Shown: one piece after another, positions 16,496-50,900 of the stretch
Layout of the letters: every line of letters starts with the position of its first letter
How positions within the stretch are numbered: position 1 is the stretch's first letter
Source of the DNA: Cyanophora paradoxa CCMP329
Lineage: Eukaryota; Plantae; Glaucophyta
NCBI GenBank assembly: GCA_004431415.1
Contig: QPMI01000089.1
Location: forward strand, 186,001-250,000
Direction of reading: 5' to 3'
DNA: 64,000 nt
Notes under the pieces: generated by a model
Told to the model about the DNA's origin: nothing
What the model saw: the letters and a program-made list of their open reading frames with translations, nothing else
Databases searched by the model: none
Translations under genes and position numbers: made by a program

Positions 16496-19400
16496 TTAGC
16501 CCTGCATCATGTGCTGGGGCGGGGAGGAGGCGACCGACGAGGCGGCGAGGGGCGTGCCGGGAGCTGTCTGCGAGGACGTCGCTATGTGCACCGCGTTGAA
16601 GCACGGGAGCCACTTCTGCGGGGGGCGTCAGTCCGCGAACGAAGGGAGGGCCCAGACTCGGGAGGGGAAGAGCGATGGCGCGCCTTGACGAGCTCGAAAA
16701 GGACGCTCTGGGAGTAGGCACGGGCGGCGATCACTTCCGGCCCGACGCTCGCCGGCGCGTGCGCCATGTTCGTCTCCGGGTGAAGAATCGCGATGACGCC
16801 TGACAGGCGTCAGCGGAGGCTGCTCGCGGGGCGGGGGCGGGGTCGGGGAGTGCGCGGGCACCGATGGCGTTGCCGTCGGCGTCGCGGCGAGGGGCGGCGT
16901 AGAGCGTGCACTGCATTCCGCCGCCGCGGGTGCGGATGATCGTGTGGATCTCGGAGCCGACGTGGTGCGCCGGGGTGCTCGCGAAGGTGGAGGCGGAGGA
17001 GGAGGTGGCGGAGAGGGAGGAGAAGGGGCGGGCGGGGGTCCCCGGGTGGCCGTGGCCCCCCTGGGCGTCAGCGAGGAGCCGGTCGAAGAGGTCCCGGACG
17101 TGCCCCGCCTGCGTCGGGTCCAGCGCGCGGGAGAGGAACGAGGCGCCGATCATCTCGGCGCGGGGGTACGCCGTCAGCTTCGAGGCCATGAGGTTCCAGT
17201 CGGTGATGCGGTAGTCGCGGTCCGTCGCGAGGAGCGGGAGGGGCATCGTCTCCACGAGGCCGTCCACCTCCTGCTGGAACATGCCGAGGAGCTCGCTCCC
17301 CGCGTGCTCCAGCTTCTCGTGCAGCCGCCGCAGCGCCCCGTCCCGCCCGCCCAGCGTCCCCGCCATCCCATCCACCGCGTGCATCGCCGGCTGCGGGGCG
17401 GGGCGGGGCAGAATGAGTCGGTTCACGAGCCTGGGCCTCGAGAGCGAGGGCGCCCGCACCGCGAGGCCAATGGAGGCCACGTCGAGGACGGTCATGCGGA
17501 GGGCGCGGGCGCAGGTGATGTCGCGCTGCGAGAAGGCCACGGCCTTGCCCTTGACCAGCTGCACGTACTTCTGGAACGAGGCGCGCGGGTTCAGGCTCCC
17601 GTTCTCGCCCCGCACGATCGCGTCCTTCAGCGGGCCGCCCCAGTTCTCCTCTTGTATCACCTGAAGAGGGCCCCGCGTCAGTTGGCCCCGCCCGCCGGCG
17701 CCTCCGCCGCGCATAAATGAGGGGAAGGACCTCGGGCCTGAACCAGAGCGCGTACTGCGCGCGGGGCGGGGCGGGGGGCGTCGGTGAGGCGGCGGGCGCG
17801 AGGCGAAGCAGACAGAGAGAGCGGGGCGGGGCGGGGCGGGGCGGGGCGGGGCGGGGCGGGGCCGGAGGGGGGCTCACGTCGCCGGGGAAGTGGGAGAGGG
17901 AGACGGCGAGGAGGCCCGATGCGACGTCGCGGACAAAGGCGGCCCCCTCGAAGTGCTCCGAAAGGCAGTCCGTGCACCACACGTCGTCCGTCATGTTCGA
18001 GTTGAGCCACTCGATCAGGTCCCGCAGGTCGATCGGGCTCGGCGTCCGCCCGAATGTCGCAAGGCCGGCCGCCCGCGTGTAGACCGCCGCGCCCCCGCAG
18101 TCGAGGATGTCGAAGACGTTGGGGCGGCCGGTGCAGAGGCCCTCCGGGAACCGGCCGTCCAGGAGGAGCTGGTCGAGGAACTGGGCCTGGATCTCCTTCG
18201 CGCGCGCGATGTGCTGCCTTAGGTCCTGCTGCTCCTTGCGCGCCAGTAGGGCGGAGAGGACGCGGGAGAGTAGGATGCAGGCCTCGCGGTGCTCGAAGGA
18301 GAGGCGCTTGGGGGAGTAGGAGTAGCAGATGAAGAGGCCCCACAGCTTCTTGTCCTTGACGATCGCGTTCGAGATCGAGGCGGCGACGCCCATGTTCTTC
18401 AGGTACTGCGTGTGGCATCGGGAGACGGCCCGCAGGACGCTCTTGCTCATGTCCAGCGGCCGCTCCGTCACGGGGCTCACCGCCGGTGTCACCTCGCACG
18501 GCTCTGCAGCGGCGGGCGGGCGGGCGGGCGGGCGCGTCGGCACAACAGCGCTGCGTGGCGTAGCGGGGGCGGGGCGCACTGGCGAAGGCGTCGGCGATGA
18601 CGCGGACGCGGTTCAGGACGAAGAGGTTCCGCGCCACAGTCGGGATGTCCGTCGCCGCTGCGCGGGCGCGGAGGGGCGGCGTCGGCCAAGCCGGACGAGC
18701 CGGGCGGAGGCGGCTGGCTCCCGGGCAGCGGGCCGCACGGACGGAGCTAGTGGTTCGGTTCTTAGAGTTCGGCTGTGGTTCTAGGCGGCGGGCGGGCGGG
18801 CAGGCGGGGGCGCACGGAAGTTGAGGCCCAGGTAGGGCTCGATGCCCTCCTTCTTGAGGACCTCGGCGAGGACCTTGCCGTGGCCCTCCGCCCCGAACCG
18901 GTACACCATCACCCGGTCGAACCCCGTGATCTGAAACTCGCAAGTGAGTGAAACTTCGGCGCAGAAACTCCAGCTCTCGCGAGCTCCGGCGCACGTCGGA
19001 GACTTCGTGGGCGAGGATCTGGCAGAGCTCGTCGACGCTGGCCGCGTTCTCGAGGTTCTCGAGGGCCGCCCGGATGCGCCCCGAGTCCGAGAAGACGAGC
19101 GTGATGTCCCGGCTAAACGGCTCCAGCTCCAGGACGACGCAGGAGGAGGCCCGGTGGAAGAGCCTGCGCGCGGTTCGGGTACCTTTCAGGCGGCGCCGAG
19201 GTTTCTCCTTCTTCAGATTGGGGGCCGCGCACCCGTCCCATATGACGCGCTCGCCGTTGTCGCGGCGAATGGTGGAGACTAGGACGGGGCTCGCGACGCG
19301 GATCTCGCCCTCGTCGCCCACCGCGCTCTGGATGACCCGCACGGACTCCTCGTCGAAGAGCGAGGAGATGTGCTGACTCACGAGCTGGTCCGGGGGGATC

Positions 19401-20640
19401 GCGACGAGCGCTTCCACGTTGGAGGAGACCTGGGCGATCGTCCAGTCTGCGTCCCGGATCGCAAGGAGGATCCCGTGGTGCTGCACGGCTCCGATCGTCG
19501 CGATCGGCTCGTAGTTCACGCGCTGCGCCGTCACCGCGTCGATGAAGCCGTCAGGCCGCCCGTCCTCCACCAGCCGCCGCTTCCGCTTCGCCGCCGCCGA
19601 CTCCGACGGGCCCTGCACACCCACCCCGCAGGCGCGCGTCACGGGCGCGGCGGCGCAGGCGCCGCGAGCGCGCGGTCGCACCGCGTCCCCTATCGACATC
19701 ACCCGCAGCTTCTCCAACTCGTTCATTAAAGTCTCTTTGTCTTTCTGTAGCTTCGCGTTCTGCGGCGGGAGCGGCGTCGGCCCCCCGTGACCCCGCGCTC
19801 GAGGAAGAGAAAGAAAGCAACCTCGTCGGCCAATATGTTCAGGTGGTCGATCGCCTTGCCTGCGGTGCGGCCGGAGACGTCAGCCGCAAAGGATGCGGTC
19901 TCTTGTCCGCGGGGACGACGAGCGAACCGAGGACCGTCGCCTTGTTCGCCTGCGAGCCCGTTGTCTCCGGGACTATCCTCCTTAGCTCCTCTATGCGCTC
20001 GTTGATCAGGTCTCGCCTTCTCCTTTCCACCTCGCTGTGGTTCTCTCTCCTTCTCGCAGGCTTCACTTCGGCGAACTGCTTGGGAATGAAGATCGGCATG
20101 CCTCCGGGTCCCGCCATGATACCGACGGGCGCGAGCCCTGGCGGAAGGCCTGCGGGGAGCTGGAACGCTGTTCCCTGCAACGCGCCCAACGATGATGTTG
20201 GAATAAAAGTGGCGCCGCCAGTCAACTTGAGCCCGGCTGCCGCCGCGGCCTGCTGGAGAGCCGCCGCGCCAGTTTCGCCAGCATACGAGAGCGATGCCGT
20301 GTTACTCGCGCCTGAGCGGGCTCAGAAAACAGAAATCCGAGGAGAAAAGGATGGGCCCACCTGCGGCGCTTAGAGGGGGCGATGCGACAGAGGGGATCGA
20401 CGTTCCGGCCGGGGACATGGACGGACCGGCACCGCCACCCCCTACGGCGCCTGAAGAAGAACTGGATGCCGAGTACTGAGATACGGACGGCGAGACGGAG
20501 GTATTCTGGCCCTGCAGAAAGGAAATCCGAGAGATATCCGCGGGGTTCATCGGCATGCGATTCTACCGAGCACGATCACTTAGGCGCGCGTATCGAGAGG
20601 ACGGCAAGCAAACGCACGAGAAACATGCTCCTCGCATCCA

Positions 20641-20702
<62 letters not shown>

Positions 20703-21210
20703 TGTGCCTGACGCTCGCTCATGAGCAACCTGCCGGGGCGGAGGCCAGTCACGCAGGCGGCAATCGAGAAACACAGCAAGGAAGAAAAGTGAAGAGCTCA
20801 CGCTTGGAGCACGTCCTGATCGAGGTGGCTGCCGGGGCGCTGCAGGCTCGCTAGTTGCGCAGCCCGCAGCTGCTCCTCCATCGCCGATCGTTGAGCCTCA
20901 TGTGCTTGCGCCTGCGTCTGCTGAGCTTGGACCATCTGCTGGAACACCGCCGAGTGGGCCGGCTGAGATCCGAGGGCCCCCAGCTGCAGAAAGGTTGGCG
21001 TCTGCGGCTGTTGCATGGGAAAGCTTGGGGCAGCATGCTGTTGTTGGCCGAGAAGCTGGGCCTGCAATGCCTGCAGCTGCGCAGCGCCCAGACCGCCGCT
21101 AGCTTGCAGGTACGCACTGCGAGGCGGTAAACGACACAAACCGCGTCTGCCGGGGAGCACAGGGCGGCTCACAGCACGTCTGTTAGCGATGGTGGTTCGT
21201 TATCATCCAT
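16496..21210 (-). CDS. bHLH-leucine zipper - phytochrome fusion (Q-rich - bHLH-Zip - NLS - PAS-GAF-PHY - PAS; no kinase)
   Basis: ATG at 21210 (MDDNEPPSLTDVL...). Exons splice in frame through the Q-rich region, RENHSEVERRRRDLINERIEELRRIVP...NKATVLGKAIDHLNILADENAKLQKDKETLMNELEKL, KRKRR, EPIATIGAVQHHG, GFDRVMVYRF, GLNFPATDIP, RAVSRCHTQYLKNMGV, WFRPE..WGG..LNPRASF and PAS DWNLMASKLTAY. Stop at 16496 if the last GC-AG intron is used, otherwise 16582. Confidence 0.92.
17821..17862. repeat. Intronic (GGGGC)n pentamer repeat
   Basis: About 8 copies. Similar tracts at ~40073-40100 and ~63864-63902, all in introns. Confidence 0.85.
20642..20704 (-). repeat. (CAG)n microsatellite encoding Q21 in the bHLH-phytochrome N-terminus
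   Basis: (ctg)n on the + strand. The flanking splice phases put it in the Gln frame (MSERQA-Q21-LDARSMFL). Confidence 0.9.
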
Positions 21211-21260: not shown

Positions 21261-21266
21261 CACGTG
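21261..21266. promoter_or_regulatory. G-box (CACGTG) ~50 bp upstream of the bHLH-phytochrome ATG
   Basis: The exact hexamer is present. Function is unproven, and hexamers occur by chance every few kb. Confidence 0.25.
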
Positions 21267-36844: not shown

Positions 36845-38164
36845 ATGGCCTTCGTATGCTGCCCGTTGCCAGCGCGCCTCGCATATGCATCGACGGGAAG
36901 CCTGGCGGCAGCGCCCGCGGCGGAGCTGCTCAGTCCGCGATGGAGCGCCGCGCCGGGCGCCTCTCCGAAGTGGGCCCGGCCGCGGTTTAGCGCCGCACCC
37001 GTCCCTCTTCGGTTTAGCGGCATAAGATCTTCGTCATCCATACAAGCAACGCAAGCAACACCCCCGGTGATACAGTGGAACGTGGTTCGCTCCGTCCGGC
37101 ACGCTCGCCCCGCCCACGGGCCCTGACCCCTGCGACGCAGCCCGCGCGCGTGAAGTTGGATCTCGACGGTGCGTTGATATCAGTTGTGTGCTACGCCCCG
37201 CCTCGTCGCTCACCCCTTCGGCAGATATCAACAGGTTGGGGCAGGCCTATAGCTATTCCGGCAGCATCCGCGCGGAGCGCTGATCGCAGGAGCAGATTGA
37301 CGAAAGGAGATGCGACTAAAGCGAAGGGTGGCTCTCGCAACGTGCCCCACCGCTTGACCCAGAGCGTACGCGCTGTCCGGTCAGAAACCTGGCGCCAGCC
37401 GCTGAGAGCCACCTCGCTCGCAGGAGCGCTTACTCTTCGAGATTGCGAGAACGCAGCGCTTTGCAGTCTTGAAAGACAGAGAGAATGTCAGGAACATATG
37501 GTGCCCGCCTGCTCCCAGCGCGCTCCTCCCTCGGCCACAGCGCACCTGAACGCTAACGCTGCCCGCCGCGCAGGGAGAAGTACTGCCACATGAAGGTCCG
37601 CCCTTGTCACGGAAGCGCGTATCCTTCCCCTTCCCTGTTCTCAGCGGCCGCGGGTCGCAGGGCATGACGACGGTCTGGGTCGACCAGAGGGGCCCCCTCG
37701 ACTTCGTGGGATGCGACGTGACGACCAGCCGCGCGTGGGAGGCGTGCCCCGAGGAGGACCGCATCCGCCTCCTCCAGCGTGCCTTCGTGGAGCTCGTCAC
37801 GGCGATCAACGGCCCCGACGCGGCGGAGGCGGCGCTGGCGGCCGCGCGGGGACTCCAGCCCGGCGTTGCCTCGGCTGGCTCAAAGGCATCTATCTGGGAC
37901 GACGACTCGCGCTCCGACTCGCGCCCTGTCAAGCCGGAGGCGAGGCCTGTGTGGGAGCCCTCGTCCGCGCAGAAGGTGCGGCTGCTCCCGCCCATGGCCA
38001 CGCCCACGTCCGCTCTCCCGCTTTCTTTGATGTCGTTCCGGCAGGCTTACGACATAGTCGCCATCTGGGAGCGCGGGATTTTCGAGGTCCGAGGCCTGAC
38101 GCGGTCGGAGAGCAAGCACAAGGCCCGCGCCGCGGCAGAAGCGCTGGAGAAGTCGCTCGCCTGA
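36845..38164 (+). CDS. Plastid-targeted hypothetical protein
   Basis: Starts MAFV with a Ser/Ala/Pro-rich presequence. Exons splice in frame to ...KLDLDDINRSRLTKGDATKAKGGSRNVPHRLTQSERLLFEIARTQRFAVLKDRENVRNIWEKYCHMKGMTTVWVDQRGPLDFVGCD...EKSLA*. Confidence 0.7.
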
Positions 38165-38902
38165 TGGGCCGTTTGTCGTACCGGGCTCAGCTGAAGTAGA
38201 GAATTCTTTAATAGACTTCTTACCCGAGAAACAGGCGCGCGCGCGCGCGCGCGAACGGCGAGACGAGTCGCAGATCAATTTCGGCAGGTTCATGTCCCCG
38301 GTCCGGCGCCGGCGCGGCGGCCCTCGCCCAGCCAGCTGCAGCGTGCGGGGCTAGGAACAGAATGCACTGTGCTGCACACTGTGACACTCGGACATGTACA
38401 TGTACAATGTGGGTGGGCCCCAAAGAGGGGCACAGCTTTTTCACTTCGTTCGCAGCTTGAAGTGAGGCCGCCGAGTCGGCGCCGACTAGCTCGCCGGCCG
38501 GCGGACTGATCGATTCTGCGCGGGTGGGCCTTGTAGCTGTTGCCAGCTCTCTTCGCCATCTTCGTGTGTGTCTTTTTTACTTTCTGGCTTTTCGGGCGCT
38601 CCCTGAGTTAGCCCGGGCTGAACCTCCGCCAGCGCGCACGGCCCAGCTGATCGAAGCCGGGCCGGGCCGATCGGAGGCTTCTTCTCGCTTCCGAAGTTCG
38701 GTTAGGTATACATAAAGCGACCTTCCTCGCTCGCTTTCCGGATTCTCCCGCCCTGATTGCACTTGTTTAGGGCGAGCCCCGAGCTCGGAGCCCGTCCGGC
38801 GTTTCCGCCAGTCTCGTTCGTTCATCTTTCCTTCTTACAGGGGATTTCCCGCGTGAAATGATGCTCGCAGGGTGAAGACGCGTCGCGGCGAACGTCGAAG
38901 GC

Positions 38903-41900
38903 ATGAATCGGTCCGCACGAGTCCTGCCGTGCTATGTACGCACGCATTTGCCCAATTATAACACCACGCAGGGGCTACGATCTCGCGTACTCCGGCCACG
39001 GCCACCGCGGGTCCGCGACCGTAACGCTTGTCGGGCTCGGGCTCAGAGCCGACCTCTGACCCTCGCGTTCTCGTCTCCAGCTGCGACTGCCCGTGTCATA
39101 GGCACCACGGCGGTGGTCATGGAGCTCGCAGAAAGCCTCGGGCAGCGTCGGTGAGCAGATCCCCCGGCGTTAGATTCGCTCGAGCTCGGGCGCTCACACG
39201 TGCGTTTCGAATTCGCAGCCTGTCCGCAAGGGACCACCGTGCGATCCCGATCTTCAATGTTGTTTATATGCGCGCCCGCCGACGCCGCCCGGACGCAGGA
39301 AGCCAGCGGCGGCGCCGCGGCCCGCGCCGGCCGTTCTGCCGCCTGTCCCGGCGCCCGAGCCCGAGCCCGAGCCGATGGAGGAGGAGGAGGAGCACGCGCC
39401 GCCCCCGCGGCGGGAAGAGCCATTCCGGAACATCGTTTTCGCCCCCCCGCGCTCCATCGGTTCGCCTGCCACTCCTCCGCCCGGCTCGACACGGGCCGGT
39501 TCCTGACGCGCGCGCCCGCCCGCAGCGCCGCCCGCGAACCTCTTCCCCACCTGGGCCAAGCAGGCTCCCAAGATGATCTACGTGAGTCCGGGCCCCTGCC
39601 GCGCCACTCTCCGGCAGCGCCCGACGCGGCGGGCGGGGCGACAGGTCCCAGACCCGAGCGCTGCGGACCGCGAGGCGGAGCTACGGGCGATGCGGCAGCA
39701 GATCGAGACCTCGCACGAGGCGAGCGGGCCGCCCTGACTTCTAACTTCTAACTTCTTCTTCTTCTTCTAACTTCCCCGGCAGGAGCGCGAGGCGGAGGCG
39801 GATGCCCTCAAGAAGCGCGTGGCGGAGCTCGAGGACGCGCTAAGGGACGCCCTGAAGCGGGCCGGCGAGGTGGAGCAGCGCGCCCGCGCCGCCGAGGGCC
39901 GCGTCAATCACGTGCGCGGCTTCACCCCCCCCCCCCCCCCCCCCCCGCGGCTCAGATCATGTCTGATCGCGGGCGGGACAGGAGCCGACGCAGCTGTTCG
40001 CGGAGCTTGCCGAGGCGAAGGCCAAGCTGCGAACCTCGCTCCCGCCGGCCGCCCTGCCGAAGGCTCCGGTGTGCCCCGCCCCGCCCCGCCCCGCCCCGCC
40101 CGCCCGCCCCACTACTCGCTGACGGGCCTTCGGTGGGGCCGCAGGCGATCACAAAGGTCGCTCCGGCGGGGCCCGGGGCCGCGACGATCGCGTGGAGCGT
40201 GCCGGTGGCCGACGCGGCCGCGGAGCCCGTCAAAACCATCGACATCTGGTGGGACGGCAGGAAGCAGGCCAGCGTCGGCCCGCAGGAGTCGAGCTACACG
40301 GCTCGCGGCCTAAAGCCCGGCGCGCCGTACGCATTCAGCCTGCGCGGAGTCAGCGACGCCGGGAAGGGGCCCCTCTGCGCCCCTGTCAGCTACGTCGAGG
40401 TGGTGGCGCCGGCGAAGCAGCCGCGGGTGAACGCGCCCAGGGACGTGGCGGCGAGCGAGGCCGGGCCCGGGGCGGCGACGGTGAGCTGGCGGGAGCCGGA
40501 GCCGCTGGAGGGCCCCGTGGCGCGCTTCGACGTCTACTCGGAGGGCGCGGCGGCGCCGCTGGGGAGCGTGCCGGCGTCGGCGGGGACGGGCAAGGCCGGC
40601 GCGCGGGCGTACGAGTTCAAGGCGACGGGCCTGAAGGCGGGCGCGCACGCGTTCTCGGTGGCGGCGGTGGGCGAGGCGCCGGCGGACGCGGCGGCGGCGG
40701 TGCCGGTGGCGCACAGCGCGCCGGTGCTGGCGACGATCTCGACGGGCCTGGCGGGGCGCCGACGGCCTGGAGGCCAAGGCGGAGGCGCCGGGCAGCGGCG
40801 CCGTCGGGCTGACGTGGAAGGCCCGCGGGCGACGCGGCGAAGGTGGAGGGTACGTCGTCTACGCGGACGGGGAGAAGATCGGCGAGGCGCCGGCGGGCAA
40901 GAGCGCGGAGGAGCCGATCAAGTACCGGGCGACGGGCCTGCAGGCGCCGCGGGCGTACGCGTTCACGGTGGCGGCGCGGACGAAGGCCGGCGAGGGCGAG
41001 CGGTCGGCGCCGGCGTCGGCGCTGGTGGCGGCGGTGGCGCCGCGGGTGAACGCGCCCAGGGACGTGGCGGCGAGCGAGGCCGGGCCCGGGGCGGCGACGG
41101 TGAGCTGGCGGGAGCCGGAGCCGCTGGAGGGCCCGTGGCGCGCTTCGACGTCTACTCGGAGGGCGCGGCGGCGCCGCTGGGAGCGTGCCGGCGTCGGCGG
41201 GGACGGGCAAGGCCGGCGCGCGGCGTACGAGTTCAAGGCGACGGGCCTGAAGGCGGGCGCGCACGCGTTCTCGGTGGCGGCGGTGGGCGAGGCGCCGGCG
41301 GACGCGGCGGCGGCGGTGCCGGTGGCGCACAGCGCGCCGGTGCTGGCGACGATCTCGACGGGCCTGGCGGGGCGCCGACGGGCCTGGAGGCCAAGGCGGA
41401 GGCGCCGGGCAGCGGCGCCGTCGGGCTGACGTGGAAGGCCCCGCGGGCGACGCGGCGAAGGTGGAGGGGTACGTCGTCTACGCGGACGGGAGAAGATCGG
41501 CGAGGCGCCGGCGGGCAAGAGCGCGGAGGAGCCGATCAAGTACCGGGCGACGGGCCTGCAGGCGCCGCGGGCGTACGCGTTCACGGTGGCGGCGCGGACG
41601 AAGGCCGGCGAGGGCGAGCGGTCGGCGCCGGCGTCGGCGCTGGTGGCGGCGGTGGCGCCGCGGGTGAACGCGCCCAGGGACGTGGCGGCGAGCGAGGCCG
41701 GGCCCGGGGCGGCGACGGTGAGCTGGCGGGAGCCGGAGCCGCTGGAGGGCCCCGTGGCGCGCTTCGACGTCTACTCGGAGGGCGCGGCGGCGCCGCTGGG
41801 GAGCGTGCCGGCGTCGGCGGGGACGGGCAAGGCCGGCGCGCGGGCGTACGAGTTCAAGGCGACGGGCCTGAAGGCGGGCGCGCACGCGTTCTCGGTGGCG

Positions 41901-44900
41901 GCGGTGGGCGAGGCGCCGGCGGACGCGGCGGCGGCGGTGCCGGTGGCGCACAGCGCGCCGGTGCTGGCGACGATCTCGACGGGCCTGGCGGGGGCGCCGA
42001 CGGGCCTGGAGGCCAAGGCGGAGGCGCCGGGCAGCGGCGCCGTCGGGCTGACGTGGAAGGCCCCGCGGGCGGACGCGGCGAAGGTGGAGGGGTACGTCGT
42101 CTACGCGGACGGGGAGAAGATCGGCGAGGCGCCGGCGGGCAAGAGCGCGGAGGAGCCGATCAAGTACCGGGCGACGGGCCTGCAGGCGCCGCGGGCGTAC
42201 GCGTTCACGGTGGCGGCGCGGACGAAGGCCGGCGAGGGCGAGCGGTCGGCGCCGGCGTCGGCGCTGGTGGCGGCGGTGGCGCCGCGGGTGAACGCGCCCA
42301 GGGACGTGGCGGCGAGCGAGGCCGGGCCCGGGCGGCGACGGTGAGCTGGCGGGAGCCGGAGCCGCTGGAGGGCCCGTGGCGCGCTTCGACGTCTACTCGG
42401 AGGGCGCGGCGGCGCCGCTGGGAGCGTGCCGGCGTCGGCGGGGACGGGCAAGGCCGGCGCGCGGCGTACGAGTTCAAGGCGACGGGCCTGAAGGCGGGCG
42501 CGCACGCGTTCTCGGTGGCGGCGGTGGGCGAGGCGCCGGCGGACGCGGCGGCGGCGGTGCCGGTGGCGCACAGCGCGCCGGTGCTGGCGACGATCTCGAC
42601 GGGCCTGGCGGGGGCGCCGACGGGCCTGGAGGCCAAGGCGGAGGCGCCGGGCAGCGGCGCCGTCGGGCTTACGTGGAAGGCCCCGCGGGCGGACGCGGCG
42701 AAGGTGGAGGGGTACGTCGTCTACGCGGACGGGGAGAAGATCGGCGAGGCGCCGGCGGGCAAGAGCGCGGAGGAGCCGATCAAGTACCGGGCGACGGGCC
42801 TGCAGGCGCCGCGGGCGTACGCGTTCACGGTGGCGGCGCGGACGAAGGCCGGCGAGGGCGAGCGGTCGGCGCCGGCGTCGGCGCTGGTGGCGGCGGTGGC
42901 GCCGCGGGTGAACGCGCCCAGGGACGTGGCGGCGAGCGAGGCCGGGCCCGGGCGGCGACGGTGAGCTGGCGGGAGCCGGAGCCGCTGGAGGGCCCGTGGC
43001 GCGCTTCGACGTCTACTCGGAGGGCGCGGCGGCGCCGCTGGGGAGCGTGCCGGCGTCGGCGGGACGGGCAAGGCCGGCGCGCGGGCGTACGAGTTCAAGG
43101 CGACGGGCCTGAAGGCGGGCGCGCACGCATTCTCGGTGGCGGCGGTGGGCGAGGCGCCGGCGGACGCGGCGGCGGCGGTGCCGGTGGCGCACAGCGCGCC
43201 GGTGCTGGCGACGATCTCGACGGGCCTGGCGGGGGCGCCGACGGCCTGGAGGCCAAGGCGGAGGCACCGGGCAGCGGCGCCGTCGGGCTTACGTGGAAGG
43301 CCCCGCGGGCGGACGCGGCGAAGGTGGAGGGTACGTCGTCTACGCGGACGGGAGAAGATCGGCGAGGCGCCGGCGGGCAAGAGCGCGGAGGAGCCGATCA
43401 AGTACCGGGCGACGGGCCTGCAGGCGCCGCGGGCGTACGCGTTCACGGTGGCGGCGCGGACGAAGGCGGCGAGGGCGAGCGGTCGGCGCCGGCGTCGGCG
43501 CTGGTGGCGGCGGTGGCGCCGCGGGTGAACGCGCCCAGGACGTGGCGGCGAGCGAGGCCGGGCCCGGGCGGCGACGGTGAGCTGGCGGGAGCCGGAGCCG
43601 CTGGAGGGCCCCGTGGCGCGCTTCGACGTCTACTCGGAGGGCGCGGCGGCGCCGCTGGGAGCGTGCCGGCGTCGGCGGGACGGGCAAGGCCGGCGCGCGG
43701 CGTACGAGTTCAAGGCGACGGGCCTGAAGGCGGGCGCGCACGCGTTCTCGGTGGCGGCGGTGGGCGAGGCGCCGGCGGACGCGCGGCGGCGGTGCCGGTG
43801 GCGCACAGCGCGCCGGTGCTGCGACGATCTCGACGGGCCTGGCGGGGCGCCGACGGCCTGGAGGCCAAGGCGGAGGCGCCGGGCAGCGGCGCCGTCGGGC
43901 TTACGTGGAAGGCCCCGCGGGCGGACGCGGCGAAGGTGGAGGGGTACGTCGTCTACGCGGACGGGAGAAGATCGGCGAGGCGCCGGCGGGCAAGAGCGCG
44001 GAGGAGCCGATCAAGTACCGGGCGACGGGCCTGCAGGCGCCGCGGGCGTACGCGTTCACGGTGGCGGCGCGGACGAAGGCCGGCGAGGGCGAGCGGTCGG
44101 CGCCGGCGTCGGCGCTGGTGGCGGCGGTGGCGCCGCGGGTGAACGCGCCCAGGACGTGGCGGCGAGCGAGGCCGGGCCCGGGCGGCGACGGTGAACTGGC
44201 GGGAGCCGGAGCCGCTGGAGGGCCCGTGGCGCGCTTCGACGTCTACTCGGAGGGCGCGGCGGCGCCGCTGGGAGCGTGCCGGCGTCGGCGGGACGGGCAA
44301 GGCCGGCGCGCGGCGTACGAGTTCAAGGCGACGGGCCTGAACGCGGGCGCGCACGCGTTCTCGGTGGCGGCGGTGGGCGAGGCGCCGGCGGACGCGGCGG
44401 CGGCGGTGCCGGTGGCGCACAGCGCGCCGGTGCTGGCGACGATCTCGACGGGCCTGGCGGGGGCGCCGACGGGCCTGCAGGCCAAGGCGGAGGCGCCGGG
44501 CAGCGGCGCCGTCGGGCTTACGTGGAAGGCCCCGCGGGCGGACGCGGCGAAGGTGGAGGGGTACGTCGTCTACGCGGACGGGAGAAGATCGGCGAGGCGC
44601 CGGCGGGCAAGAGCGCGGAGGAGCCGATCAAGTACCGGGCGACGGGCCTGCAGGCGCCGCGGGCGTACGCGTTCACGGTGGCGGCGCGGACGAAGGCCGG
44701 CGAGGGCGAGCGGTCGGCGCCGGCGTCGGCGCTGGTGGCGGCGGTGGCGCCGCGGGTGAACGCGCCCAGGGACGTGGCGGCGAGCGAGGCCGGGCCCGGG
44801 GCGGCGACGGTGAGCTGGCGGGAGCCGGAGCCGCTGGAGGGCCCGTGGCGCGCTTCGACGTCTACTCGGAGGGCGCGGCGGCGCCGCTGGGAGCGTGCCG

Positions 44901-47900
44901 GCGTCGGCGGGACGGGCAAGGCCGGCGCGCGGCGTACGAGTTCAAGGCGACGGGCCTGAAGGCGGGCGCGCACGCGTTCTCGGTGGCGGCGGTGGGCGAG
45001 GCGCCGGCGGACGCGGCGGCGCGGTGCCGGTGGCGCACAGCGCGCCGGTGCTGGCGACGATCTCGACGGGCCTGGCGGGGGCGCCGACGGCCTGGAGGCC
45101 AAGGCGGAGGCGCCGGGCAGCGGCGCCGTCGGGCTGACGTGGAAGGCCCCGCGGGCGGACACGGCGAAGGTGGAGGGTACGTCGTCTACGCGGACGGGAG
45201 AAGATCGGCGAGGCGCCGGCGGGCAAGAGCACGGAGGAGCCGATCAAGTACCGGGCGACGGGCCTGCAGGCGCCCCGGGCGTACGCGTTCACGGTGGCGG
45301 CGCGGACGAAGGCCGGCGAGGGCGAGCGGTCGGCGCCGGCGTCGCGCTGGTGGCGGCGGTGGCGCCGCGGGTGAACGCGCCCAGGGACGTTGCGGCGAGC
45401 GAGGCTGGGCCCGGGCGGCGACGGTGAGCTGGCGGGAGCCGGAGCCGCTGGAGGGCCCGTGGCGCGCTTCGACGTCTACTCGGAGGGCGCGGCGGCGCCG
45501 CTGGGAGCGTGCCGGCGTCGGCGGGACGGGCAAGGCCGGCGCGCGGGCGTACGAGTTCAAGGCGACGGGCCTGAAGGCGGGCGCGCACGCGTTCTCGGTG
45601 GCGGCGGTGGGCGAGGCGCCGGCGGACGCGGCGGCGGTGGTGCCGGTGGCGCACAGCGCGCCGGTGCTGGCGACGATCTCGACGGGCCTGGCGGGGGCGC
45701 CGACGGCCTGGAGGCCAAGGCGGAGGCGCCGGGCAGCGGCGCCGTCGGGCTTACGTGGAAGGCCCCGCGGGCGGACGCGGCGAAGGTGGAGGGGTACGTC
45801 GTCTACGCGGACGGGGAGAAGATCGGCGAGGCGCCGGCGGGCAAGAGCGCGGAGGAGCCGATCAAGTACCGGGCGACGGGCCTGCAGGCGCCGCGGGCGT
45901 ACGCGTTCACGGTGGCGGCGCGGACGAAGGCCGGCGAGGGCGAGCGGTCGGCTCCGGTGGCAGTGCTCATCGCTGCTCAGGCAGCGACAGTCGGAGCGCC
46001 CAAGGACGTGTCGACTGTTGAGGCGGGCCCTGGCGTCGTTCTCGTCATGTGGCGCGAGCCAGACCCTGCGGAAGGCACTGTCACCTTGTACGAAGTGTAC
46101 TCGGAGTCCTCATCGAATCCGTTCGGAACAATCGGGACGGTGCTTCCATCTGCAGTGTCCGGCAAGCCTGGTACCCGGCGATACGAGTACAAGGCGACAG
46201 GATTGAAGCCCGGCCCGCACTGCTTCGTGATCACAGCTGTTGGAGAGCAGCCTGTGGCGGGGACCGACGGACGCGGAGCCCGCACAGCAGCCGGCGCAGC
46301 ACCAGCGCCAACGGCTCACAGCAAGCCTATCATGACGCACGTTTCTACGGGCCTGGCTGGGGCGCCGACGGGCCTGGAGGCCAAGGCGGAGGCGCCGGGC
46401 AGCGGCGCCGTCGGGCTGACGTGGAAGGCCCCGCGGGCGGACGCGGCGAAGGTGGAGGGGTACGTCGTCTACGCGGACGGGGAGAAGATCGGCGAGGCGC
46501 CGGCGGGCAAGAGCGCGGAGGAGCCGATCAAGTACCGGGCGACGGGCCTGCAGGCGCCGCGGGCGTACGCGTTCACGGTGGCGGCGCGGACGAAGGCCGG
46601 CGAGGGCGAGCGGTCGGCGCCGGCGTCGGCGCTGGTGGCGGCGGTGGCGCCGCGGGTGAACGCGCCCAGGGACGTTGCGGCGAGCGAGGCTGGGCCCGGG
46701 CGGCGACGGTGAGCTGGCGGGAGCCGGAGCCGCTGGAGGTCCCGTGGCACGCTTCGACGTCTACTCGGAGGGCGCGGCGGCGCCGCTGGGGAGCGTGCCG
46801 GCGTCGGCGGGGACGGGCAAGGCCGGTGCGCGGGCGTACGAGTTCAAGGCGACGGGCCTGAAGGCGGGCGCGCACGCGTTCTCGGTGGCGGCGGTGGGCG
46901 AGGCGCCGGCGGACGCGGCGGCGCGGTGCCGGTGGCGCACAGCGCGCCGGTGCTGGCGACGATCTCGACGGGCCTGGCGGGGCGCCGACGGCCTGGAGGC
47001 CAAGGCGGAGGCGCCGGGCAGCGGCGCCGTCGGGCTTACGTGGAAGCCCCGCGGGCGACGCGGCGAAGGTGGAGGGTACGTCGTCTACGCGGACGGGGAG
47101 AAGATTGGCGAGGCGCCGGCGGGCAAGAGCGCGGAGGAGCCGATCAAGTACCGGGCGACGGGCCTGCAGGCGCCGCGGGCGTACGCGTTCACGGTGGCGG
47201 CGCGGACGAAGGCCGGCGAGGGCGAGCGGTCGGCGCCGGCGTCGGCGCTGGTGGCGGCGGTGGCGCCGCGGGTGAACGCGCCAGGGACGTCGCGGCGAGC
47301 GAGGCCGGGCCCGGGGCGGCGACGGTGAGCTGGCGGGAGCCGGAGCCGCTGGAGGGCCCGTGGCGCGCTTCGACGTCTACTCGGAGGGCGCGGCGGCGCC
47401 GCTGGGAGCGTGCCGGCGTCGGCGGGGACGGGCAAGGCCGGCGCGCGGGCGTACGAGTTCAAGGCGACGGGCCTGAAGGCGGGCGCGCACGCGTTCTCGG
47501 TGGCGGCGGTGGGCGAGGCGCCGGCGGACGCGGCGGCGGCGGTGCCGGTGGCGCACAGCGCGCCGGTGCTGGCGACGATCTCGACAGGCCTGGCGGGGGC
47601 GCCGACGGGCCTGGAGGCCAAGGCGGAGGCGCCGGGCAGCAGCGCCGTCGGGCTTACGTGGAAGGCCCCGCGGGCGGACGCGGCGAAGGTGGAGGGGTAC
47701 GTCGTCTACGCGGACGGGGAGAAGATTGGCGAGGCGCCGGCGGGCAAGAGCACGGAGGAGCCGATCAAGTACCGGGCGACGGGCCTGCAGGCGCCGCGGG
47801 CGTACGCGTTCACGGTGGCGGCGCGGACGAAGGCCGGCGAGGGCGAGCGGTCGGCGCCGGCGTCGGCGCTGGTGGCGGCGGTGGCGCCGCGGTGAACGCG

Positions 47901-50900
47901 CCCAGGGACGTCGCGGCGAGCGAGGCCGGGCCCGGGGCGGCGACGGTGAGCTGGCGGGAGCCGGAGCCGCTGGAGGGCCCGTGGCGCGCTTCGACGTCTA
48001 CTCGGAGGGCGCGGCGGCGCCGCTGGGAGCGTGCCGGCGTCGGCGGGACGGGCAAGGCCGGCGCGCGGCGTACGAGTTCAAGGCGACGGGCCTGAAGGCG
48101 GGCGCGCACGCGTTCTCGGTGGCGGCGGTGGGCGAGGCGCCGGCGGACGCGGCGGCGGCGGTGCCGGTGGCGCACAGCGCGCCGGTGCTGGCGACGATCT
48201 CGACAGGCCTGGCGGGGCGCCGACGGCCTGGAGGCCAAGGCGGAGGCGCCGGGCAGCAGCGCCGTCGGGCTTACGTGGAAGCCCCGCGGGCGGACGCGGC
48301 GAAGGTGGAGGGTACGTCGTCTACGCGGACGGGAGAAGATTGGCGAGGCGCCGGCGGGCAAGAGCACGGAGGAGCCGATCAAGTACCGGGCGACGGGCCT
48401 GCAGGCGCCGCGGGCGTACGCGTTCACGGTGGCGGCGCGGACGAAGGCCGGCGAGGGCGAGCGGTCGGCGCCGGCGTCGGCGCTGGTGGCGGCGTGGCGC
48501 CGCGGGTGAACGCGCCAGGGACGTGGCGGCGAGCGAGGCCGGGCCCGGGCGGCGACGGTGAGCTGGCGGGAGCCGGAGCCGCTGGAGGGCCCGTGGCGCG
48601 CTTCGACGTCTACTCGGAGGGCGCGGCGGCGCCGCTGGGAGCGTGCCGGCGTCGGCGGGACGGGCAAGGCCGGCGCGCGGGCGTACGAGTTCAAGGCGAC
48701 GGGCCTGAAGGCGGCGCGCACGCGTTCTCGGTGCGGCGGTGGGCGAGGCGCCGGCGGACGCGCGGCGGCGGTGCCGGTGGCGCACAGCGCGCCGGTGCTG
48801 GCGACGATCTCGACGGGCCTGGCGGGGCGCCGACGGCCTGGAGCCAAGGCGGAGGCGCCGGGCAGCGGCGCCGTCGGGCTGACGTGGAAGGCCCCGCGGG
48901 CGGACACGGCGAAGGTGGAGGGGTACGTCGTCTACGCGGACGGGAGAAGATCGGCGAGGCGCCGGCGGGCAAGAGCGCGGAGAGCCGATCAAGTACCGGG
49001 CGACGGGCCTGCAGGCGCCGCGGGCGTACGCGTTCACGGTGCGGCGCGGACGAAGGCCGGCGAGGGCGAGCGGTCGGCGCCGGCGTCGGCGCTGGTGGCG
49101 GCGGTGGCGCCGCGGGTGAACGCGCCAGGGACGTCGCGGCGAGCGAGGCCGGGCCCGGGGCGGCGACGTGAGCTGGCGGGAGCCGGAGCCGCTGGAGGGC
49201 CCGTGGCGCGCTTCGACGTCTACTCGGAGGGCGCGGCGGCGCCGCTGGGAGCGTGCCGGCGTCGGCGGGGACGGGCAAGGCCGGCGCGCGGCGTACGAGT
49301 TCAAGGCGACGGGCCTGAAGGCGGGCGCGCACGCGTTCTCGGTGGCGGCGGTGGGCGAGGCGCCGGCGGACGCGGCGGCGGCGGTGCCAGTGGCGCACAG
49401 CGCGCCGGTGCTGGCGACGATCTCGACGGGCCTGGCGGGGCGCCGACGGGCCTGGAGGCCAAGGCGGAGGCGCCGGGCAGCGGCGCCGTCGGGCTTACGT
49501 GGAAGGCCCCGCGGGCGGACGCGGCGAAGGTGGAGGGTACGTCGTCTACGCGGACGGGGAGAAGATCGGCGAGGCGCCGGCGGGCAAGAGCGCGGAGGAG
49601 CCGATCAAGTACCGGGCGACGGGCCTGCAGGCGCCGCGGGCGTACGCGTTCACGGTGGCGGCGCGGACGAAGGCCGGCGAGGGCGAGCGGTCGGCGCCGG
49701 CGTCGGCGCTGGTGGCGGCGGTGGCGCCGCGGGTGAACGCGCCCAGGACGTCACGGCGAGCGAGGCCGGGCCCGGGGCGGCGACGGTGAGCTGGCGGGAG
49801 CCGGAGCCGCTGGAGGGCCCGTGGCGCGCTTCGACGTCTACTCGGAGGGCGCGGCGGCGCCGCTGGGGAGCGTGCCGGCGTCGGCGGGGACGGGCAAGGC
49901 GGCGCGCGGGCGTACGAGTTCAAGGCGACGGGCCTGAAGGCGGGCGCGCACGCGTTCTCGGTGGCGGCGGTGGGCGAGGCGCCGGCGGACGCGTGGCGGT
50001 GGTGCCGGTGGCGCACAGCGCGCCGGTGCTGGCGACGATCTCGACGGGCCTGGCGGGGGCGCCGACGGGCCTGGAGGCCAAGGCGGAGGCGCCGGGCAGC
50101 GGCGCCGTCGGGCTTACGTGGAAGGCCCCGCGGGCGGACGCGGCGAAGGTGGAGGGGTACGTCGTCTACGCGGACGGGGAGAAGATCGGCGAGGCGCCGG
50201 CGGGCAAGAGCGCGGAGGAGCCGATCAAGTACCGGGCGACGGGCCTGCAGGCGCCGCGGGCGTACGCGTTCACGGTGGCGGCGCGGACGAAGGCCGGCGA
50301 GGGCGAGCGGTCGGCGCCGGCGTCGGCGCTGGTGGCGGCGGTGGCGCCGCGGGTGAACGCGCCCAGGGACGTGGCGGCGAGCGAGGCCGGGCCCGGGGCG
50401 GCGACGGTGAACTGGCGGGAGCCGGAGCCGCTGGAGGGCCCCGTGGCGCGCTTCGACGTCTACTCGGAGGGCGCGGCGGCGCCGCTGGGGAGCGTGCCGG
50501 CGTCGGCGGGGACGGGCAAGGCCGGCGCGCGGGCGTACGAGTTCAAGGCGACGGGCCTTGCGTTCGGCCCACACGCGTTCTCCGTCGCCTCCGTTGGTGT
50601 CCCAGCCGCTGGCTCGCCAGAGGGCGCGGCCCCCGTGGCGCACAGCGCGCCCGTGGCGCTCGCGCTTGTCAAGCCCCGCCCCCCGCCGTTCGAGCTGCGC
50701 GTCGCCTCGACGTGGGAGACTGGCGTGGAACTGGCGTGGACGCGCCCGCGGCACGTGCCGCAGGGCTCGATCGTCGGGTTCGACGTGATGCAGGACGGCC
50801 GCGCGGTCGGCACGGCGCCGCCCACACCCGATGTCGCCTACAAGGTTGACGGCCTCGCGCCGGGCTCGTCGTACCGCTTCGCGGTGCGCACGCAGCTGGC

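What the first reader, a model, noticed from the sequence alone, without database searches (positions are those of the whole stretch)
16496..21210. A phytochrome fused to a bHLH-leucine-zipper DNA-binding domain: candidate one-component bilin light-switched transcription factor
Seen: an uninterrupted in-frame splice path from ATG 21210 through a Gln-rich/Q21 region into a bHLH (HSEVERRRRDLINERIEELRRIVP..NKATVLGKAIDHL) and a four-leucine zipper (L-ADENAK-L-QKDKET-L-MNELEK-L). A basic NLS (KRKRR) follows, then a complete PAS-GAF-PHY module (DIP, Cys-His, WGG, PRxSF) and one PAS, with no kinase. The joining introns are 19860-19927 and 19760-19821, both GT-AG. The end of the zipper lies in the same open frame as the PAS domain (ORF 17678-19726), so that junction does not depend on splice prediction. 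Known: the H-x3-E-x3-R basic signature marks G-box (CACGTG) binders such as USF, MITF, Cbf1 and plant PIFs. Land-plant phytochromes signal through separate bHLH PIF proteins. Photoreceptor-TF fusions are known for LOV domains (aureochrome, WC-1). I know of no characterised bHLH-phytochrome, but I cannot check the literature here. Inference: light directly gates DNA binding or dimerisation, a 'Rosetta-stone' parallel to phy-PIF signalling and a possible optogenetic tool. The DNA-binding domain is N-terminal to the photosensory core, opposite to the usual C-terminal output.
Basis: partly seen in the sequence, partly recalled or inferred. Interest (0 to 1): 0.96.

Follow-up and report, generated by a model that had tools for sequence, protein, structure and literature searches.

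The report
Phytochrome fused to DNA-binding bHLH-zipper
The alga Cyanophora paradoxa expresses one gene that joins a DNA-binding transcription factor to a phytochrome light sensor; related algae keep the same pairing and sequence databases already list it, but I found no study of it, so light control of its gene-regulating activity is still untested.

Summary
The fusion is real. A 17-exon minus-strand gene (21210-16496, 1174 aa) encodes Q-rich N-terminus, bHLH-zipper, NLS, PAS-GAF-PHY and PAS, with no kinase. Spliced contigs from three public runs join the bHLH exon to the PAS and GAF exons. Residues 294-1174 equal Cyanophora paradoxa 'phytochrome sensor 2' (AHB62100.1), which lacks 293 N-terminal residues. 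Orthologues with the same bHLH occur in Gloeochaete and a third, unnamed glaucophyte-clade sequence. The three form one clade and all lack an intact kinase, so the bHLH is the only intact output. The bilin Cys-His, DIP and tongue motifs are kept; His290 is Tyr, as in glaucophyte phytochromes without bHLH. The NLS lies 15-19 residues before PAS in all three, while the zipper-to-NLS gap varies from 9 to 47. This favours light-gated nuclear access over rigid coupling to DNA binding (inferred). No PIF ancestry is shown. I found no functional paper, but four key Lagarias-lab papers were unreadable here and may already show the architecture. This scan noted a bHLH-phytochrome before, on another piece of this genome (s1-572092).

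The parts
16496..21210 (-). Whole gene, 17 exons, 1174 aa (CparGPS2 with its 5' extension). Introns: 21172-21117, 20801-20730, 20617-20563, 20360-20312, 19927-19860, 19821-19760, 19681-19613, 19232-19164, 18994-18931, 18815-18658, 18579-18504, 17877-17755, 17730-17661, 17459-17391, 16861-16800, 16683-16616 (GC-AG)
   Evidence: Model; 12 of 16 introns seen as joints or a loose end in spliced contigs; aa 294-1174 identical to P0001
21110..21186 (-). Conserved L-x-D-[VIL]-L-x-Y motif (aa 9-15, spans intron 1); candidate activation-domain helix
   Evidence: Same motif within the first 35 aa of P0002 and P0003; chance 0.0006 in shuffles of the 310-aa N-terminus. Function inferred
20642..20704 (-). 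Q21 run within a Gln/Ala/Ser/Gly-rich N-terminal region (aa 1-305); the Q-richness is not shared by the orthologues
19834..20051 (-). bHLH (aa 310-359), group-B signature His314, Glu318, Arg322
   Evidence: Pfam HLH; 63% identical to both orthologues with saturated synonymous sites; PDB relatives MYC2, USF2, SREBP1, USF1, MITF, Max
19697..19854 (-). Helix 2 and leucine zipper (aa 353-384), 3-4 heptads
   Evidence: Heptad register kept in orthologues; continuous helix in the low-confidence model
19574..19588 (-). Basic NLS-like motif KRKRR, 17 aa before the PAS start (KKRK at 15 and 19 aa in the orthologues)
   Evidence: function inferred
19118..19513 (-). N-terminal PAS of the photosensory core; the BphP biliverdin Cys is replaced by Val
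   Evidence: PAS_2
18241..19036 (-). GAF: DIP 18649-18641, bilin Cys-His 18417-18412, His290-to-Tyr at 18324-18322
17475..18195 (-). PHY with tongue motifs WGG (17642-17634) and PRASF (17588-17574)
   Evidence: model pLDDT 91.9, Foldseek to Cph1 E 2.9e-52
16777..17270 (-). Single C-terminal PAS with a Ser/Thr-rich insert
   Evidence: Pfam PAS
16580..16701 (-). Short KKWLP-containing tail shared with the ends of REC-bearing glaucophyte phytochromes; read as a remnant of a deleted HK-REC module
   Evidence: Alignment A1; interpretation inferred

Best explanation
A one-chain, bilin-switched transcription factor of glaucophyte algae. SHOWN: one spliced mRNA encodes N-terminal region, bHLH-zipper, NLS and PAS-GAF-PHY-PAS; the arrangement is conserved in three glaucophyte-clade proteins; the ancestral histidine-kinase/receiver output is deleted (Cyanophora) or degenerate (the other two). 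FROM KNOWN FAMILIES: the GAF Cys binds a reduced bilin (probably phycocyanobilin), photoisomerisation refolds the PHY tongue, and the bHLH-zipper dimerises and reads CACGTG through His, Glu and Arg. INFERRED: the segment just before PAS occupies the place of the plant phytochrome N-terminal extension, which folds onto the bilin pocket and tongue in one photostate only. Here that segment carries the NLS at a fixed distance, so photoconversion most likely hides or exposes the NLS and sets how much of the factor reaches the nucleus, where the zipper-dimerised bHLH binds G-boxes and the N-terminus activates transcription. I put about 0.7 on 'light regulates this factor's transcriptional output by some route' and about 0.4 on the NLS/N-terminal-extension route.
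For: Spliced joints from bHLH exon to GAF exons in one 1646-nt contig in X1 and X5, while a DNA-type contig (X15) covers 18560-20600 unspliced (exon arithmetic). GenBank protein identical. Orthologues P0002 and P0003 are the only other hits from the bHLH side and the top hits from the GAF side; an intact 1412-aa ORF on a 6273-nt transcript contig. The three form one clade, SH-aLRT 98-99. bHLH 63% and GAF 73% identical while about 60% of shared codons differ synonymously. No H-box His in P0002 or P0003. D207, C259, H260, Y176, Y263, R222, R254, WGG and PRxSF equivalents kept; confident canonical fold. NLS-to-PAS 17/15/19 aa against zipper-to-NLS 9/26/47 aa. The phyB N-terminal extension is unstructured in Pr and folds onto the pocket and tongue in Pfr (PMC13276271).
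Against: No spectrum, localisation or DNA-binding data exist here. The spacing argument rests on three sequences, two of them sister rows in the tree. AlphaFold places nothing for the NLS segment (pLDDT under 50). His290-to-Tyr and Trp478-to-Tyr/Phe change the D-ring and tongue environment, so the photocycle cannot be predicted. In phyB, nuclear import depends on the C-terminal PAS repeat, not on the N-terminal extension (PMC13276271), so the analogy is partial.
Confidence: 0.45

Rival explanations
1. Direct gating of DNA binding or dimerisation: the photosensory modules change their dimer arrangement in light and thereby bring together or pull apart the two zippers, switching G-box binding, as aureochromes do with LOV.
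For: phyB switches from a head-to-tail to a head-to-head dimer on photoactivation (PMC13276271). The zipper is short (3-4 heptads), so extra dimer contacts could matter. The Cyanophora linker from zipper to PAS is only about 35 aa.
Against: The linker is variable in length (about 35-75 aa) and low in complexity and conservation (17-31% identity), so it cannot transmit a helical register; bHLH-zippers usually dimerise on their own (own knowledge).
Confidence: 0.22
2. DNA-tethered phytochrome: the factor is always nuclear and DNA-bound, and light changes cofactor recruitment, condensate formation or protein turnover through the photosensory module and the PAS tail.
For: A canonical NLS is conserved, and an activation-type motif is kept at the N-terminus. 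Plant phytochrome signalling uses photostate-dependent partner binding and condensates (PMC13276271).
Against: It does not explain the fixed NLS-to-PAS spacing. The C-terminal tail is poorly conserved (26-30% in the second PAS) and mostly deleted in Cyanophora.
Confidence: 0.2
3. A light-blind or mainly chemical sensor: the module reports bilin availability from the plastid (apo against holo form) rather than light.
For: His290 is Tyr, His202 is Asn and Trp478 is Tyr/Phe, against His, His and Trp in most bacterial relatives.
Against: The Tyr at 290 is also present in the glaucophyte phytochromes without bHLH, P0004 and P0005. Two glaucophyte phytochromes are known to photoswitch (CparGPS1, GwitGPS1; PMC12558739, PMC12420706), though I could not check their residue at this site. 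All photocycle motifs, including the PHY tongue, are conserved.
Confidence: 0.12
4. Annotation artefact: a bHLH gene and a phytochrome gene lie side by side and are joined only by prediction or rare read-through.
For: A tandem phytochrome lies next door, and assembled contigs can bridge neighbouring genes. The runs' RNA status is a guess by the tool.
Against: Three consecutive GT-AG splice joints link bHLH to PAS in frame in three runs; the GenBank record has the fusion; two other species have it.
Confidence: 0.01

Closest known systems
Glaucophyte phytochrome sensors (GPS); this gene is CparGPS2, AHB62100.1 / UniProt V9PWX6
   Same: Identical protein over aa 294-1174; PAS-GAF-PHY followed by a single PAS, as described for GPS (PMC4525182).
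   Different: GPS are described with a His-retaining kinase; this protein has none and has an N-terminal bHLH-zipper instead. Li et al. 2015 list 'Cyanophora paradoxa 2' (KF615870, presumably this gene) but never mention HLH. The public record lacks 293 N-terminal residues.
Aureochromes (bZIP-LOV) and other LOV transcription factors
   Same: One chain with the DNA-binding domain N-terminal to the light sensor (PMC10967245; order from own knowledge).
   Different: Flavin LOV sensor and bZIP there; three-domain knotted bilin sensor and bHLH-zipper here. No homology.
Plant phyB-PIF module
   Same: Phytochrome coupled to a group-B, G-box-type bHLH.
   Different: Two proteins there, with PIF inactivated by Pfr; PIFs and canonical phytochromes arose in streptophytes (PMC13167755). 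No PAS-PAS-HKRD tail here, and a zipper that PIFs lack (own knowledge). PIF ancestry not shown.
bHLH-zipper factors USF, MITF/TFE, SREBP, Max, Cbf1; plant MYC2
   Same: Basic-region His/Glu/Arg, helix 2 running into a zipper, low-complexity activation-type N-terminus; phmmer 35-42 bits.
   Different: None carries a photoreceptor; no hit is close enough to assign a subfamily.
Cph1-type phytochromes (GAF-Cys, PCB)
   Same: GAF Cys-His, no N-terminal biliverdin Cys, same fold (TM 0.82-0.86).
   Different: His290-to-Tyr, His202-to-Asn, Trp478-to-Tyr; no kinase.

Membership tests
Knotted phytochrome (PAS-GAF-PHY) | PAS, GAF, PHY in order with canonical fold | tested here: met
   Pfam; AlphaFold pLDDT 91.9 and Foldseek
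Knotted phytochrome (PAS-GAF-PHY) | Bilin-binding Cys and pocket residues (DIP, CH, Y176, Y263, R254, R222), tongue WGG and PRxSF | tested here: met
   exception: His290 is Tyr
Knotted phytochrome (PAS-GAF-PHY) | Covalent bilin attachment and reversible photoconversion | not testable with these tools
   needs recombinant holoprotein
Glaucophyte GPS | Photosensory core groups with glaucophyte phytochromes; single PAS after PHY | tested here: met
   Five-row clade, support 100 against bacterial rows only, quick tree; named in the public record
Glaucophyte GPS | C-terminal histidine kinase with phospho-acceptor His | tested here: not met
   Absent in this gene; H-box lost in P0002 and P0003
Group-B bHLH-zipper | HLH domain with H5-E9-R13 basic signature | tested here: met
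   His314, Glu318, Arg322, invariant in three orthologues
Group-B bHLH-zipper | Heptad zipper continuing helix 2 | tested here: met
   (3-4 heptads; shorter in Gloeochaete)
Group-B bHLH-zipper | Sequence-specific binding to CACGTG | not testable with these tools
   needs EMSA or DAP-seq
PIF (bHLH VIIa) | bHLH groups with the streptophyte PIF clade; APB motif | not tested
   No PIF sequences were available by reference; no PIF among PDB hits; PIF origin in streptophytes (PMC13167755)
One-component light-regulated transcription factor (aureochrome-like mode) | Sensor and DNA-binding domain on one expressed chain | tested here: met
One-component light-regulated transcription factor (aureochrome-like mode) | Light changes DNA binding, localisation or transactivation | not testable with these tools
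   no functional data

The most novel reading that the evidence does not exclude
The first natural one-chain bilin-switched transcription factor: a glaucophyte-wide phytochrome that lost its kinase output and instead gates its own bHLH-zipper by light, reaching G-box genes without a separate PIF-like partner, with no functional study published so far.
Probability: 0.5. Interest if true: 0.85.

Novelty: new variant of a known kind. Interest (0 to 1): 0.7.

Why it matters
How phytochromes outside streptophytes reach the genome is open, because PIFs arose later. A conserved phytochrome-bHLH chain gives a directly testable answer for glaucophytes, an early-branching lineage of plastid-bearing algae: one protein can be expressed, loaded with bilin and assayed for G-box binding and nuclear import in each photostate. 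It would show that phytochrome-to-G-box signalling arose twice by different routes, and that a phytochrome can signal through its N-terminal side alone. A one-chain bilin-switched factor could also serve as an optogenetic tool. The corrected N-terminus (293 extra residues) matters for anyone cloning from the public record.

Tried and rejected
(homologue search with a 208-aa exon) was blank because of the tool's length window and is uninformative. The JGI metagenome scan with the bHLH-PAS alignment found no further loci. The ESM Atlas gave no cluster joining HLH with phytochrome domains; all feature scores were under 0.9 and small clusters are not searched. The full-length fold from 5 sequences was poor (pLDDT 52) and is used only for helix boundaries. 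A G-box 51 nt upstream of the ATG is not more than chance (15 seen, 12.2 +/- 3.5 expected). My first model mis-picked two splice sites and was corrected with the reads. I first read His290-to-Tyr as specific to the bHLH clade; the ungapped register shows it in all five glaucophyte rows. Ten literature searches found no paper on a bHLH-phytochrome. Rockwell 2014 and Duanmu 2014 (PNAS) and Rockwell and Lagarias 2017 and 2020 are not held. The careful tree did not finish; the quick tree is reported. The joined spliced model was never sent to a search tool: I searched exons by reference and the public protein by its id, so the N-terminal 293 residues were compared only locally.
Full report
Observation. 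The minus strand from 21210 to 16496 carries a 17-exon gene with one stop-free frame of 1174 aa. The exons score separately for HLH, PAS_2, GAF, PHY and PAS in Pfam. Twenty public runs of one organism hold the stretch. In runs X1, X5 and X8 the contigs skip exactly the predicted introns, including 19927-19860, 19821-19760 and 19681-19613, which lie between the bHLH and PAS. One 1646-nt contig runs from upstream of the bHLH into the GAF exons, and a contig of run X15 covers 18560-20600 unspliced and without differences. The tool only guesses that these runs are RNA, but precise GT-AG skipping beside an unspliced contig shows that they are. The reads moved the acceptor of intron 3 to 20563 and confirmed a GC-AG last intron. 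Introns 1 and 2 were outside the stretch laid. The joined model was built and compared only inside scripts; searches used exons by reference or the public protein by id.

Identity. A search with the genomic ORF returned UniProt V9PWX6 / AHB62100.1, 'phytochrome sensor 2' of Cyanophora paradoxa, 881 aa, with HLH among its precomputed domains. It equals aa 294-1174 of my model exactly, so the public record starts at an internal Met. The extra N-terminus has independent support: RNA continues upstream of that Met, and a L-x-D-[VIL]-L-x-Y motif at aa 9-15 recurs near the start of both orthologues (shuffle frequency 0.0006).

Conservation. An exhaustive search with the GAF-PHY exon gave two close relatives, P0002 (1279 aa) and P0003 (1411 aa); both have HLH, PAS_2, GAF, PHY and PAS. 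P0003 is from the Gloeochaete wittrockiana transcriptome, with an intact ORF on a 6273-nt contig. P0002 has no species name; it groups with P0003. A search from the bHLH side found only these three. They form one clade, sister to two glaucophyte-clade phytochromes without bHLH (quick tree), so the fusion most simply arose once, before Cyanophora and Gloeochaete split. Identity to the orthologues is 63% in the bHLH, 73% in GAF, 51-55% in PHY and 17-31% in the linker, while about 60% of shared codons differ synonymously. Both halves are under purifying selection.

Output. Described GPS proteins end in a His-retaining kinase (PMC4525182). Here the kinase is absent, and only a short KKWLP tail shared with REC-bearing relatives remains. 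P0002 and P0003 keep a kinase-like region without the H-box His. The bHLH-zipper is therefore the only intact output in all three. Its basic region has His314, Glu318 and Arg322, the group-B signature for CACGTG (established knowledge). Its nearest solved relatives, MYC2, USF2, SREBP1, USF1, MITF and Max, score 35-42 bits, too even for a subfamily call. PIFs arose in streptophytes (PMC13167755), so the phy-PIF parallel is best read as convergence; I did not test this with a tree.

Sensor. The core folds confidently (pLDDT 91.9, pTM 0.89) and matches Cph1 and bacteriophytochromes (TM 0.82-0.86). Equivalents of Cph1 D207, C259, H260, Y176, Y263, R222, R254 and the tongue motifs are kept, and the N-terminal biliverdin Cys is Val, which points to a reduced bilin on the GAF Cys. 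His290 is Tyr in all five glaucophyte-clade rows, so the colour of the photocycle cannot be predicted. The two characterised glaucophyte phytochromes are atypical; CparGPS1 has a blue/far-red cycle (PMC12420706).

Mechanism. The basic motif lies 17, 15 and 19 residues before the PAS start in the three proteins, whereas its distance from the zipper end is 9, 26 and 47. The phytochromes without bHLH have no such motif. A linker that varies this much is unlikely to transmit a rigid signal to the zipper, while a motif pinned to PAS sits where plant phytochromes have the N-terminal extension, which folds onto the pocket and tongue only in Pfr (PMC13276271). I therefore favour light-gated NLS exposure (about 0.4-0.45), ahead of dimer-geometry gating of DNA binding (0.22), light-dependent partner recruitment or turnover on DNA (0.2) and a light-blind bilin sensor (0.12). 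These routes can coexist. None has been shown, and the spacing argument rests on three sequences.

Novelty. The sequence and its domains are in public databases, and 'Cyanophora paradoxa 2' was used in a phylogeny that does not mention HLH (PMC4525182). A 2025 review of algal photoreceptors names only GPS1 proteins and no bHLH (PMC12558739). Ten searches found no paper on the fusion. I could not open the depositors' papers; from memory, unverified, one of their architecture figures may carry an 'HLH' label, and I put about even odds on that. I found no functional study. This scan has noted a bHLH-phytochrome on another piece of this genome (s1-572092); I could not tell whether it is a duplicate assembly of this locus or a paralogue. 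The databases show one Cyanophora protein only.

Verdict. A real, expressed, conserved and apparently uncharacterised phytochrome-transcription-factor fusion: a new variant of the one-component photoreceptor-factor kind, and a GPS that fails the kinase criterion.

Noticed in passing
window 14845-10433 (-): Tandem neighbour: PAS-GAF-PHY-PAS-HK-REC phytochrome with intact H-box (HELRT) and receiver Asp, but a divergent pocket (SDVP in place of DIP; tandem Cys followed by Gln in place of Cys-His). It could form a functional pair with GPS2 or have a two-Cys, blue-shifted cycle.
   Followed up: partly
window 21261-21266: A CACGTG G-box 51 nt upstream of the ATG; it would allow autoregulation, but the count in the window is at chance level.
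   Followed up: partly
window 16683-16616 (-): GC-AG intron, spliced in three runs.
   Followed up: yes
window 17452-17778 and 18277-18663: Other contigs, at least 95% alike, match the PHY-tongue and GAF exons and then diverge or have different introns: close phytochrome paralogues elsewhere in the genome.
   Followed up: no
window 20562-20512 (-): The RNA-supported 5' part of exon 4 encodes a short motif that aligns with a conserved 'RFFTDQIPF' stretch of both orthologues, a second conserved island in the N-terminus.
   Followed up: partly
proteins P0004, P0005: Glaucophyte-clade phytochromes with PAS then REC and no kinase: a second line of kinase loss, sister to the bHLH clade.
   Followed up: partly
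same genome, another piece (s1-512676): The scan notes a bHLH-zipper-LOV-LOV gene; a heterodimer with GPS2 would combine flavin and bilin inputs. Speculation, not tested.
   Followed up: no
window 38000-50000: A long stretch at 76-80% GC with strong positive GC and AT skew; not examined.
   Followed up: no
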